Source: Sphyrna mokarran
Lineage: Eukaryota
Direction: 5' to 3'
Length of the DNA: 64,000 nucleotides
NCBI GenBank assembly: GCA_024679065.1
Contig: JAGIQG010000016.1
Location: forward strand, 5,394,001 to 5,458,000
Under the pieces are notes generated by a model, which saw nothing but the letters and a program-made list of their open reading frames with translations, did not search any database and was not told the origin of the DNA. Position 1 is the first letter of the stretch; the number at the start of each line of letters is the position of its first letter. The translations under genes and the position numbers were made by a program. Below are positions 2,175 to 5,120 of this stretch, in pieces.

Positions 2175-5120
2175 GAACAAAGAAAGAACAAAGAACAAAG
2201 AACAAAACAGCACGGGAAACAGGCCCTTCGGCCCAACGAGCCCGCGCCGCCACCCCGATGTTCCCACCTCTACCCGTGATCCCTGTCCATGTTTATAGAT
2301 CTATGGATTAAAACCAAATTTGAGACAATTTAGGGAGAATTTGTTTTGCCAATTAGCCTAAGAGCACATCTTTGGGATGTGGGAGGAAACTGGAGCCCTC
2401 CGGAGAAAACCCACGCAAGCATGGGGAGAATGCGCAAACTCCCACAGACACAGGCCCAAACCCATGTATCTGCACAGCACAGCGATAGTCACTGAGCTGT
2501 CGTGTTGCCCATCAAATGGTCCAGGTCAAGCGTACACTAACGATGTGAAGCACTAGGATACTCTCGAAAAAAGATCCAAGAGCAGCCCTCTCACGACCCA
2601 TCGCGTGTATGCCCCTCATTAGACAACAAGGTGGACCAAAGCACCTGTAGGATAAAAACAAATACATCAATATCATCATCTATTTACACACTTCCCAGGG
2701 ACTCCCAAGGCTCATGATCCCGATTTTAAATCAGTTTTCTATACCCCTCCATTCCCATTCTGTTCATGTGCCCATCTAAGTATTTCTTAAATAACTCCAG
2801 AGTGCCTGCCTCCACCACTTTACTTGGCAGCGCATTCCATACCCCCACCACCTGCTGTGTGAAAAAACTCCCTCTAGCATCCAAATTATACCTTACCCCC
2901 CTCACCCTAAGCCCATGACCCCTTGTGCTATTTGAGTCTATCCTAGGAAAAAGCTTACTCTATCTATACCCCTCATAATCTTGTACACCTCTATTAGATC
3001 TCCTCTAAGTCTACGTCTTTCTAAGGAAAACAGTCCCAATTTGCCTTATCTCTCCTCGTAACTCAGACCTTCCATACCAGGCAGCATCCTGGTAAACCTC
3101 CTCTGCACTCTCTCCAGAGTCTCCACGTCCTTCCAGTAGTAAGATGACCAGAACTGGACGCAGTATTCCAAATGAGGTCTAACCAACGTTTTATACAACT
3201 GCAACATTAAAGCCAGCTCTTGTACTCTATACCCCTTCCTATAAAGGCTAGCATACTATATGCTTTCTTCACAACCTTCTCCACTTGCTCTGCCACCTTC
3301 AGAGACTTGTGCACCTGCACCCCCAGGTCCCTCTGCGTTTCTATACTCTTAATAGGTCTACCCTTTATCATATACCTCCCCACTACATTCTTTCTCCCGA
3401 ACTGCATCACCTCACATTTATCAGGATTGAATTCCATCTGCCATCTATCTGCCCAAGCTACCAGCCTATCTATGTCCTGCTGTATCGCCTGACAATGTTC
3501 CTCACAATCCGCAAGTCCAGCCATCTTTGTATTGTCTGCAAACTTGCTGATCACTCCACTTACTCCCTCTTCCAAGACATTTGTATATATTACAAATAGA
3601 AGAGGTTCCAGTACCGAGCCCTGCGGCACACCACTAGTGACCGATCTCCAGCTAGAGCAACACTCTTCCACTATTACTCTCTGTCTCCTATTACCAAGCC
3701 AGTTACTTATCCATCTAGCTACCTGTCCTTGTATCCCATTTGCCTTGACCCTCTCGACTAACCTCCCATGAGGGACTTTGTCTAATGCCTTACTAAAATC
3801 CAAATAGACATCATCAACGGCTCGCCCTTCGTCCACTGATTTCGTCACCTCCTCAAAAAATTCTACCAGAGTTGTAAGGCACGACCTCCCTTAACAAATC
3901 CGTGCTGCGTATCCCTAATCAGATCGCAACGCTCTAAGTGCCTATACATCCTATCTCTAAGAATCCCCTCCAAAAGCTTCCCTACCACTGACGTCAAACT
4001 CACTGGCCTATAATTTCCAGGATTATCCTGGAATTTTAAACAACGGTACAACATTAGCTATTCTCCAGTCCTCTGGGACCTCACCTGTGTTCAAGGAAGA
4101 GACAAAGATTTACGTCAGAGGCCCAGCAATTTGACCTCGCACCTCCCTAAGCAGTCTGGGATAAATGCCATCAGGCCCCGGAGATTTATCAGTTTTAATG
4201 CTACCTAGAAGCTCTGACACTTCCTCCCTCGGTATGGATATTCCCCTCAACTGGTCCACAGCTCCCTCAGAGACAGGAGCTGTCAACAAGCCCCTCTCCT
4301 TCGTGAATACCGACGCAAAGTATTCATTCAGGATCTCCGCCATTCCCTCGGGTTCTAAGCACAGTTCCCCTCCTCTGTCCCTAAGAGGTCCGATTTTTCC
4401 TCTAACCACCCTTTTATTCCTAACATAGGAATAAAAAACCTTTGGGTTTTCCTTAATCCTATCCGCCAAAATCATTTCATGCCCCCTTTTTGCCCTTCTA
4501 ACTCCCTGTTTGAGCTCCCTCCTACTCTCTCTATATTCCTTCAACTTTGTCTCAGTTCCCAGCTGCTTTGACCTATCATACGCTTCTCTTTTCTTCCTAA
4601 CCAAGTCCTCAATATCCCTAGTAATCCATGGCTCTCTAATCCTACCTTTCCCATCTTTCCTCTTGGCTGGCACATATTTATCTTGCAACATTTTCAGTAT
4701 TCCCTTGAAAGAATCCCACATGCCTAGCGTGGACTTACCCTCAAACAACCGTTCCCAATCAATTTCCCCAAGATCCTGCCTAATCCGACCGTAGTTAGCC
4801 TTCCCCCAGTACAGCACCCTGCCCCTAGAGCAACAAGCATCCTTTTCCATCTGAAAACTAAAGTAGACAGAATTGTGGTCACTGTTAGCCACATGGTCCC
4901 CCACTACAACATCAACCAACTGCCCTGGCTCATTACTCAGAACTAAATCCAATATAGCCCCTTCTCTAGTCAGGCTAGCCACATACTGCTCCAACAATCC
5001 TTCCATTACACATTTTACAAATTTACGCCCATCCAAACCCCCAGCTCTGGGTACTTTCCAATCCACCTCAGGGAGATTAAAATCTCCCACTATATCGACT
5101 CTGTTCTTTCTGCACCTGTG
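2175..5120 (-). mobile_element. CR1 LINE, 5'-truncated (end of endonuclease plus RT, frameshifted), with long V-domain-containing 3' UTR
   Basis: ORFs 4110-5090 (GDFNLP, SDHN, DKSPGPDG), 3863-4054 (NYRPVSLTS) and 3207-3848 (YLDFSKA, GVPQGSVL, FADNTK). Stop at 2726-2728. UTR 2175-2725 ends in (TTTGTTC)n. Confidence 0.95.

What the first reader, a model, noticed from the sequence alone, without database searches (positions are those of the whole stretch)
2175..2728. CR1 LINE lineage whose 3' UTR contains the V-SINE central domain
Seen: five copies (2175-5120 -, 9025-9600 +, 23737-24957 +, 31745-32003 +, 61404-62132 +) share this UTR. Four of them show it as ~550 nt directly after the CR1 ORF2 stop, compared with ~100 nt in other CR1s here (e.g. 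7605-7700). Inside it is TTGGG..TGTCTGCGGGAGTTTGCGCATTCTCCCCGTGCTTGCGTGGGTTTTCTCCGGGTGCTCCGGTTTCCTCCCAC..CCAAAGATGTG..TTAGG..GATTGG, the core of the local V-SINEs, in sense orientation, without a tRNA head, at the same position in two diverged subfamilies. All copies end in the CR1 terminal motif and a (TTTGTTC)n tail. Two copies are arm-specific insertions, so the whole unit retrotransposes. Established: SINE tails derive from partner LINE 3' ends, while the origin and function of conserved SINE bodies such as V, CORE and Deu are unresolved. Inference: either the V-domain is native to a CR1 3' UTR and V-SINEs are a tRNA head plus that long LINE end, or a CR1 captured a V-SINE and kept its core under selection. 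Both imply a cis function for the V-domain in an autonomous element.
Basis: partly seen in the sequence, partly recalled or inferred. Interest (0 to 1): 0.85.

Follow-up and report, generated by a model that had tools for sequence, protein, structure and literature searches.

The report
CR1 LINE carrying a SINE V-domain
A family of CR1 retrotransposons in this cartilaginous-fish genome carries, inside its own long 3' untranslated region, the conserved "V" core otherwise known only from SINEs, which gives a direct handle on the unsolved question of what such SINE cores do.

Summary
Five copies (four of one subfamily, one of a second) share a ~550-nt stretch that follows the CR1 ORF2 stop directly in the four copies that keep the ORF end. 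About 130 nt of it match the V core of 26 local tRNA-headed V-SINE rows, in sense (E 2e-25 to 3e-32).

The window is a large inverted duplication. Two copies are present in one arm only, with clean empty sites in the other arm, so ORF2 end, V and tail moved as one unit.

Between subfamilies the V core (94%) and the terminal hairpin (97%) are better kept than the coding sequence (75%; third codon positions 68%) and than neighbouring UTR segments (34-48%). This points to constraint.

Origin is unresolved but leans to capture from a V-SINE. The LINE V cores sit inside the HE1-like family in a tree, yet the alternative is not rejected (p-AU 0.07). No Pol III head survives.

No RNA structure, expression or function was shown.

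[quoted passage not shown] Repbase and Dfam could not be checked.

First readers noted this family at least 8 times on other pieces of this genome.

The parts
2175..5120 (-). Copy 1 (subfamily 1): 5'-truncated CR1 with ORF2 remains (endonuclease part, RT; frameshifts and stops) plus the full long UTR.
   Evidence: ORF pieces. RVT_1 E 2.7e-16; Exo_endo_phos_2 E 1e-5, 25.8 bits, below the 27.4 cut-off..
2175..2728 (-). Long 3' UTR of copy 1. Segments: stop-proximal 2725-2649, upstream module 2648-2539, pre-V segment 2538-2460, V core 2459-2330, variable post-V 2329-2252, terminal hairpin plus (TTTGTTC)n 2251-2175.
   Evidence: segment coordinates from alignment A1.
9014..9601 (+). Copy 2 (subfamily 1): last ~20 codons of ORF2 plus the UTR. 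V core 9342-9469. The terminal hairpin has an 8-nt deletion.
23737..24957 (+). Copy 3 (subfamily 2): intact last 220 codons of ORF2 (23738-24397, stop at 24398-24400) plus a 557-nt UTR. V core 24695-24822. Insertion specific to arm 1.
   Evidence: uninterrupted translation; empty site at 59583/59584.
31745..32004 (+). Copy 4 (subfamily 1): 5'-truncated at the start of the V core. V core 31745-31863 with a 9-nt deletion, then post-V, hairpin and tail.
61404..62132 (+). Copy 5 (subfamily 1): last 62 codons of ORF2 plus the UTR. V core 61860-61988. Insertion specific to arm 2, flanked by about 5 nt (AATCC).
24505..24694 (+). Conserved block upstream of V (upstream module plus pre-V segment; coordinates of copy 3). 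It is 80-88% identical between subfamilies. Its origin is unknown.
   Evidence: 88/110 and 70/80 identical; no structure signal; weak likeness to both SINE heads and CR1 tails.

Best explanation
This is a CR1-type LINE lineage with at least two subfamilies. Its 3' UTR is about five times longer than that of neighbouring CR1 lineages and contains a V-domain (the conserved core of V-SINEs) as a fixed internal part.

Shown: the element is copied from its 3' end by target-primed reverse transcription, starting at the terminal hairpin and (TTTGTTC)n tail. Every insertion that is long enough therefore carries V together with the end of ORF2.

Inferred, origin: the V block came from a V-SINE of the HE1-like kind. 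The route was either reverse-transcriptase template switching or a SINE lying in or just after the UTR of a master copy. Its Pol III promoter was lost or never included. This happened before the two subfamilies split.

Inferred, retention: the V block and about 190 nt upstream of it have since been kept under purifying selection in the master lineages. I take this as a cis-acting RNA-level module that benefits the LINE transcript in the same way it benefits V-SINE RNAs, for example in stability, localisation or access to the retrotransposition machinery.

Proposed by-product: a V-domain in a LINE transcript gives homology through which V-SINEs could acquire that LINE's tail by template switching.
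For: Unit and shared position.

Arm-specific insertions with exact empty sites.

A series of different 5' truncation points with one common 3' end.

Homology to V-SINEs, in sense: (E 2e-25 to 3e-32).

V is absent from 11 of 11 other CR1 3' ends in the window.

The LINE V cores form one clade (100/99), so there was one acquisition before the subfamily split. That clade sits among family A rows, with support 82/81, 89/88 and 80/82.

Conservation, subfamily-1 majority against copy 3:
- V core 102/109 (93.6%)
- terminal 60/62 (96.8%)
- pre-V 70/80 (87.5%)
- upstream module 88/110 (80%)
- stop-proximal UTR 35/103 (34%)
- post-V 47/99 (47.5%)

For comparison, coding sequence is 510/681 identical, and codon positions 1/2/3 are 82.8/84.8/68.1% identical. 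The high-low-high pattern along the UTR is hard to obtain from a single recombination event.

Precedent for capture of V with loss of the head: MER6 (PMC6887750, abstract and passages).

Wide distribution of V in SINEs with different LINE partners: PMC4758252 and PMC11481361 (passages).
Against: - No recognisable tRNA head. The head-only profile found nothing and there are no strict A or B boxes.
- The weak likeness of the pre-V 75 nt to SINE heads (18, 23, 64 and 18 of 1500 background windows score as high) is matched by a likeness to the nearest CR1 tails (7, 7, 34 and 7 of 1500). Both ideas were formed after seeing the data.
- Nesting in family A is not significant (p-AU 0.070). The tree has no outgroup, and its rows are single decayed copies.
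- No structure signal. 0 of 63 predicted pairs are compensatory. Fold z-scores are -1.10 and -0.87. The 18 pairs predicted in the V core hardly vary.
- The segments with 34-48% identity may be replaced rather than diverged sequence. Part of the mosaic could then reflect recombination and not selection.
- No full-length intact element is in the window, so autonomy is inferred.
Confidence: 0.6

Rival explanations
1. The V-domain is native to an old CR1 3' UTR, and V-SINEs arose as a tRNA head fused to such a long LINE end. On this reading the lineage preserves the ancestral source.
For: - No SINE head is detectable upstream of V.
- The LINE V cores form a distinct, long-branched clade (branch length 0.24, support 100/99), with diagnostic differences from both local SINE families.
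- The AU test does not reject placing the LINE outside family A (p 0.070).
- SINE tails are known to derive from LINE 3' ends (PMC5786205, PMC5499810, passages).
Against: - 11 of 11 other CR1 3' ends here lack V.
- The local V-SINE families share neither the LINE's post-V segment nor its tail type.
- 0 of 26 V-SINE rows carry the LINE-type V.
- The free tree places the LINE among family A rows.
- The V core is reported in SINEs from Cnidaria to vertebrates with L2, CR1, Nimb and other partners (PMC4758252, PMC11481361), while a systematic Repbase comparison found no LINE counterpart (PMC5786205, section 24).
Confidence: 0.15
2. V is a captured passenger with no function of its own. Its high similarity between subfamilies comes from recent exchange of UTR blocks between master copies (template switching or gene conversion), not from selection.
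For: - The UTR is a mosaic of blocks with 34-48% and 80-97% identity, as expected if segments are swapped.
- No compensatory pairs and no fold-energy excess were found.
- RT template switching is the accepted route of module exchange among SINEs and LINEs (PMC5499810, PMC4824008, passages).
Against: - Two separate conserved blocks (upstream module through V, and the terminal hairpin) are split by a non-conserved post-V segment, so at least two exchanges would be needed.
- The V block is more conserved than first and second codon positions of ORF2.
- Both subfamilies were inserting after the arms formed and both still carry V.
Confidence: 0.22
3. The V segments are independent V-SINE insertions that happened to land in CR1 UTRs.
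For: V-SINEs are very dense here: 26 V-only rows in 64 kb.
Against: - V lies in the same alignment columns in 5 of 5 copies and in both subfamilies.
- Diagnostic differences from all SINE rows are shared by the LINE copies, which form a 100/99 clade.
- No internal SINE tail is present: the tail profile hits only the terminus.
- No flanking direct repeat of 7 nt or more is shared among the 3 copies examined.
- Two whole units are arm-specific insertions.
Confidence: 0.01

Closest known systems
HE1 SINE / HER1 LINE pair of sharks and rays (V-SINE superfamily). Seen only as a table row in PMC3747384; the original papers (Ogiwara 1999, 2002) were not held, so their details are recalled.
   Same: The host group is the same, the V central domain is the same, and the partner is a CR1-type LINE with a hairpin and a short-repeat tail. 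Family A SINEs in this window have that build.
   Different: In that pair only the 3' tail is shared between SINE and LINE. Here the LINE itself carries the V core, upstream of its own tail. The tail repeat is TTTGTTC and not the GATTCTAT type seen on family A.
MER6/MER6A MITEs of mammals, which carry a V-domain from an inserted Ac1-like SINE (PMC6887750, abstract and passages).
   Same: A V core without a working SINE head sits inside another mobile element and is spread by that element's own transposition.
   Different: The carrier there is a non-autonomous DNA transposon, and those elements appear no longer active. Here the carrier is a coding LINE lineage that uses the same retrotransposition route as V-SINEs, so V could act in cis on that route.
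SINE middle bodies derived from the 5' parts of RTE and Vingi LINEs (Kojima 2018, PMC5786205; abstract, passages and section 24).
   Same: It is a case of sequence shared between a SINE body and a LINE outside the 3' tail.
   Different: There the direction is LINE to SINE, the piece comes from the LINE 5' region, and none of the widely conserved domains (V, CORE, Deu) had a LINE counterpart. Here the shared piece is the V domain, it lies in a 3' UTR, and the direction is probably SINE to LINE.
Ordinary CR1 3' ends: short UTR, terminal hairpin, microsatellite. Recalled for the chicken; seen here in 11 other CR1 ends.
   Same: The terminal 50 nt and the microsatellite tail fit the profile of local CR1 tails.
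   Different: The UTR is about 550 nt instead of about 100 nt, and it has a ~320-nt conserved internal block that includes V.

Membership tests
CR1-clade LINE | ORF2 with an apurinic-type endonuclease and a reverse transcriptase | tested here: met
   RVT_1 E 2.7e-16 (60.3 bits, cut-off 29.6). Exo_endo_phos_2 E 1e-5 (25.8 bits, just under the cut-off of 27.4). Copy 1 is frameshifted, so its pieces were searched apart.
CR1-clade LINE | 3' end formed by a conserved hairpin-type motif followed by a short microsatellite, with no poly(A) | tested here: met
   a profile of 26 local CR1 tails hits the terminus in 4 of 5 copies at E 7.8e-9 to 1e-7; copy 2 scores E 0.12 because of a deletion; (TTTGTTC)n tails in 5 of 5 copies.
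CR1-clade LINE | 5'-truncated copies with a common 3' end and short or no target-site duplications | tested here: met
   five different 5' ends and one 3' end; duplications of 0-1 nt and about 5 nt at the two datable insertions.
CR1-clade LINE | Placement within the CR1 clade in an RT phylogeny | not tested
   Only nearest named relatives were seen: reverse transcriptases of birds and of sharks and rays, and one named 'from mobile element jockey'. No clade tree was made.
CR1-clade LINE | ORF1 and a full-length 5' region (autonomy) | not testable with these tools
   All five copies are 5'-truncated.
V-SINE superfamily | V central conserved domain | tested here: met
   a profile of 10 local V-SINE copies against the 5 UTRs gave E 2.2e-25 to 3.1e-32, in sense orientation.
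V-SINE superfamily | tRNA-related head with Pol III A and B boxes | tested here: not met
   the head-only profile found no hit in 5 of 5 UTRs; strict A and B boxes in 0 of 5 UTRs, against 6 of 26 (A) and 9 of 26 (B) SINE rows; no tRNA call. True SINE heads also miss the Rfam tRNA model, so that last test has little power.
V-SINE superfamily | Short, non-coding, non-autonomous unit | tested here: not met
   In 4 of 5 copies V is contiguous with the end of ORF2, and the joint unit inserts as one piece.
Composite element with a captured V core (MER6-like case) | V homology lacking a working head, embedded at a fixed place in another mobile element | tested here: met
Composite element with a captured V core (MER6-like case) | An identifiable donor SINE lineage | tested here: inconclusive
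   the LINE clade lies among family A rows (82/81, 89/88); holding family A together without the LINE costs 5.46 lnL units, p-AU 0.070.

The most novel reading that the evidence does not exclude
The V-domain is a true cis-acting retrotransposition module that is used by an autonomous CR1 as well as by its SINE parasites. The LINE-borne V is then the missing homology bridge for SINE-LINE tail exchange. [quoted passage not shown] In its strongest form, V was born in a CR1 3' UTR.
Probability: 0.22. Interest if true: 0.82.

Novelty: new variant of a known kind. Interest (0 to 1): 0.62.

Why it matters
Why conserved SINE cores (V, CORE, Deu and others) persist for hundreds of millions of years is an open question. 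All the papers read here say so (PMC4824008, PMC5804259, PMC5786205, PMC11481361).

One of the three standard hypotheses is that the core serves the SINE-LINE relationship. It was discounted explicitly because no LINE was known to carry such a domain (PMC5804259, passage). A systematic Repbase comparison likewise found no LINE counterpart (PMC5786205, section 24).

A coding CR1 lineage that has kept V better than its own codons removes that objection. It also makes the question testable: one LINE construct, with and without V, in a retrotransposition assay. And it supplies a natural donor through which V-SINEs could obtain new tails.

If the block turns out to be a neutral passenger, the case is still a clear example of SINE-to-LINE capture, the reverse of the usual direction.

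Tried and rejected
1. Internal old CR1 tail inside the UTR. A profile of 26 tails hit only the terminus, plus one antisense hit at E 0.043 in copy 3. Rejected as a clear feature. A later local-alignment test did show a weak likeness of the pre-V 75 nt to the 4 nearest CR1 tails: 7, 7, 34 and 7 of 1500 background windows score as high. This is left open.

2. Decayed tRNA head upstream of V.
- The full-SINE profile alignment ran into that region, but the head-only profile found nothing.
- In shuffle tests, 1, 1, 15 and 2 of 500 shuffles reached the observed score.
- In genomic background tests, 18, 23, 64 and 18 of 1500 windows did.
The likeness is weak and not decisive.

3. tRNA and RNA-family calls. 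ARAGORN made 0 calls. Rfam gave 0 matches at gathering score. At E up to 10 there were only chance-level lncRNA rows, both for the UTR and for true SINEs.

4. Conserved RNA structure of the upstream block. 63 pairs were predicted and 0 are compensatory (using 4 of 5 copies because copy 4 lacks the block). Fold z-scores are -1.10 and -0.87. For the V core, 14 of 29 rows were used, 18 pairs were predicted and they are nearly invariant. There is no support either way.

5. Nested-insertion reading: rejected.

6. Copies from elsewhere.
- Two scans of metagenome contigs, one of viral contigs and one of genome contigs found 0 matches.
- Cluster look-up of the five closest ORF2 relatives gave no names.

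7. Reads. One search listed 20 rows that hold part of the stretch. Coded organism A holds 0.93 of the sampled words, B 0.77, C 0.70, and D to G about 0.4. Three rows are on record as RNA, all metatranscriptomes.

8. Literature. Six searches found no description of a LINE with a V or other conserved SINE domain. Ogiwara 2002 is not held. Supplements were not opened, and the supplementary tables of PMC5786205, PMC6887750 and PMC11481361 could bear on this. Repbase and Dfam are not on hand.

Rows dropped.
- One search aligned 11 of the 26 V rows, those with a CR1-type tail.
- The profile used 10 of those 11; the composite at 8613 was dropped.
- One search used 24 of 29 rows. Dropped were four rearranged or partial rows (44046, 45388, 54056, 16617) and the 5'-truncated 37624. 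Copy 1 was left out before that.
- The 26 tails were picked by eye from the 43 fuzzy matches.
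Full report
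WHAT IS THERE

The stretch 2175-2728 (minus strand) follows the stop codon of a 5'-truncated CR1 ORF2. That ORF2 has a reverse-transcriptase match (RVT_1, E 2.7e-16) and a near-threshold endonuclease match (Exo_endo_phos_2, E 1e-5; 25.8 bits against a cut-off of 27.4).

blastn of these 554 nt against the window gave 35 rows:
- one was self;
- four were further copies: 9074-9601, 61593-62142 and 31746-32004 at 91-92%, and 24494-24957 at 79%;
- 26 rows matched only UTR positions 267-399;
- 4 rows matched only the last 65 nt, and these are tails of other CR1s.

The 26 rows are V-SINE copies with tRNA-like heads. By eye they form two families. Family A has a CR1-type tail ending in GATTCTAT-like repeats; 11 rows were aligned. 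Family B (8 rows) has a different tail. A few rows are variants.

A profile of 10 family A copies matched all five UTRs on the top strand only, at E 2.2e-25 to 3.1e-32. The V core is therefore present, in sense orientation, and far beyond chance.

ANATOMY

In alignment A1 all five copies share one 3' end, which is a terminal hairpin motif followed by 2.5-4.5 units of TTTGTTC. They have five different 5' ends: within ORF2 for copies 1, 3 and 5, 20 codons before the stop for copy 2, and at the start of V for copy 4. This is the usual pattern of 5' truncation.

From the stop codon the UTR reads as follows (coordinates):
- a stop-proximal segment of 77-103 nt;
- an upstream module of about 110 nt;
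- a pre-V segment of about 80 nt;
- the V core of about 130 nt;
- a post-V segment of 66-79 nt;
- the terminal hairpin and tail.

A profile of 26 local CR1 tails matched only the terminus, at E 7.8e-9 to 1e-7 in 4 of 5 copies. Copy 2 has an 8-nt deletion there and scored E 0.12. Eleven other CR1 3' ends in the window have short UTRs, and none overlaps a V match.

THE UNIT MOVES AS ONE

The window is an inverted duplication, with arms 20504-36389 and 64000-48211 that are 84-98.5% identical by block.

Copy 3 (23737-24957) is missing from the second arm, where its flanks are adjacent at 59583/59584, with no target duplication or 1 nt. Copy 5 (61404-62132) is missing from the first arm and is flanked by about 5 nt, AATCC.

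Both subfamilies therefore inserted after the arms formed, each time as ORF2 end plus V plus tail. Independent nested SINE insertions are excluded on these grounds:
- V lies in the same columns in 5 of 5 copies.
- The LINE copies share diagnostic differences from all SINE rows and form a 100/99 clade.
- No internal SINE tail is present.
- No flanking repeat is shared among the copies.

CONSERVATION

The subfamily-1 majority was compared with copy 3:

| Segment | Identical | % |
|---|---|---|
| V core | 102/109 | 93.6 |
| Terminal region | 60/62 | 96.8 |
| Pre-V segment | 70/80 | 87.5 |
| Upstream module | 88/110 | 80 |
| Stop-proximal segment | 35/103 | 34 |
| Post-V segment | 47/99 | 47.5 |

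For comparison, coding sequence (copy 1 against copy 3) is 510/681 identical, or 75%. Codon positions 1, 2 and 3 are 82.8, 84.8 and 68.1% identical.

The V block is thus kept better than the codons. Two conserved blocks are separated by an unconserved one. I read this as constraint on the master lineages. Block exchange between masters remains possible, because the 34-48% segments may be replacements rather than diverged sequence.

ORIGIN

For capture from a SINE:
- V is missing from all other CR1 ends here.
- The local SINE families share neither the LINE's post-V segment nor its tail. No match to UTR positions 400-478 exists outside the five copies.
- No SINE row has the LINE-type V (0 of 26).
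- In an ML tree of 24 rows the LINE clade lies among family A rows (82/81, 89/88) on the A side of a weak A/B split (80/82).

Against:
- Forcing family A together without the LINE costs only 5.46 lnL units (p-AU 0.070).
- The tree has no outgroup, and its rows are single decayed copies.

A head remnant would settle the direction, but the evidence for one is weak:
- The head-only profile found nothing.
- Strict A and B boxes are absent in 5 of 5 UTRs.
- The 75 nt before V align to SINE heads better than shuffles do: 1, 1, 15 and 2 of 500 shuffles reach the observed score. Against genomic background, 18, 23, 64 and 18 of 1500 windows score as high.
- The same 75 nt align at least as well to the 3' ends of the four nearest CR1 lineages: 7, 7, 34 and 7 of 1500 windows score as high.

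These are two post-hoc readings: a decayed head, or an old LINE end to which V and a new tail were appended. Both would mean capture. Neither is established.

STRUCTURE AND EXPRESSION

RNAalifold on the upstream block predicted 63 pairs, with 0 compensatory changes. Single-sequence folds are no more stable than shuffles, with z-scores of -1.10 and -0.87. The 18 pairs predicted in the V core hardly vary. Rfam and ARAGORN found nothing.

Public runs of several coded organisms hold many of this copy's 31-letter words: 0.93, 0.77 and 0.70, then about 0.4. Three rows are on record as RNA. Distribution and expression therefore remain unknown. I worked beside that part afterwards and sent none of it to any search tool.

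RELATIVES ELSEWHERE

The intact 220-residue ORF2 end of copy 3 has 6681 relatives at E up to 1e-10 among 6956 candidates. The closest are unnamed ENA contigs (88% and 78% identity). Named relatives are from sharks and rays (Stegostoma, Hypanus, Chiloscyllium, Leucoraja, Mobula, Pristis) and from birds.

Exact-pattern scans of the metagenome, viral and prokaryote collections found nothing.

COMPARISON WITH WHAT IS KNOWN

- PMC5804259 (passages) lists three hypotheses for conserved SINE domains. [quoted passage not shown]
- PMC5786205 (abstract, passages, section 24) compared all Repbase SINEs and LINEs. It found LINE 5' parts in some SINE bodies, but no counterpart of the widely conserved bodies.
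- PMC6887750 (abstract, passages) shows a V core, head lost, carried by the MER6 DNA transposon. That is the nearest precedent for capture.
- PMC4758252 and PMC11481361 (passages) show V in SINEs of many phyla with several LINE partners, and call its role unclear.
- The HE1/HER1 pair was seen only as a table row in PMC3747384. Ogiwara 2002 is not held, and what I say of it is recalled.

Six searches found no description of a LINE with such a domain. Repbase, Dfam and the papers' supplements were not available.

First-stage readers noted the same family at least 8 times on other pieces of this genome, and none of those notes was followed up. One note says the cassette also sits in an R2 UTR. 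I could not test that.

VERDICT

The element is a CR1 lineage with a V-domain fixed in its 3' UTR. The V-domain was probably captured from an HE1-like V-SINE before two subfamilies split, and it was probably kept by selection. A cis function is inferred, not shown.

I class it as a new variant of a known kind: LINE-SINE module exchange in the unusual direction, involving a conserved SINE core. It is of real interest because it makes the function of such cores testable.

Noticed in passing
window 20504-36389 and 48211-64000: The window is a large inverted duplication (palindrome). Block identities between the arms run from 84% to 98.5%, and the centre lies near 42 kb. Each arm has private CR1 insertions.
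   Followed up: partly
window 60054-61114, 22507-23270 and 14958-15406: These are minisatellites with a 52-nt unit: 20.4 copies at 80% matches, its mirror array in the other arm, and 8.7 copies at a third place. The unit is the 3' part of the SINE V-domain plus the following ~25 nt, so they are SINE-derived tandem arrays. At two of the three places, near 61250-61400 and near 14880, the array adjoins a V-SINE head.
   Followed up: partly
window about 24495-24510; also about 9150-9165, 61668-61680 and 2640-2655 (minus): A pyrimidine tract followed by CAG, resembling a 3' splice site, is kept at the 5' edge of the conserved UTR block in both subfamilies. Use as an acceptor was not tested.
   Followed up: no
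window 2460-2538 (minus), 9263-9341, 24615-24694, 61781-61859: The pre-V segment is 87.5% identical between subfamilies. Its 3' 75 nt show a weak likeness to both SINE heads and the 3' ends of the nearest CR1 lineages. Its origin is unexplained.
   Followed up: partly
window 8440-8620 (minus): A composite V-SINE with two V cores in tandem: a head and a partial V are followed by a second V and a CR1-type tail.
   Followed up: no
window 5905-7700 (+) and 43383-43680 (+): These are the nearest other CR1 lineage. ORF2 is 51-78% identical by piece to copy 1 over 6307-7599. The UTR is only about 90-100 nt and the tail repeat is TTGTTCTA-like. They are useful as the V-less comparison.
   Followed up: partly
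(runs X15, X17, X18): Three metatranscriptome runs, one of them labelled soil, hold 0.13-0.39 of the sampled words of this CR1 stretch. Whether this is host RNA, contamination or a conserved part could not be examined.
   Followed up: no
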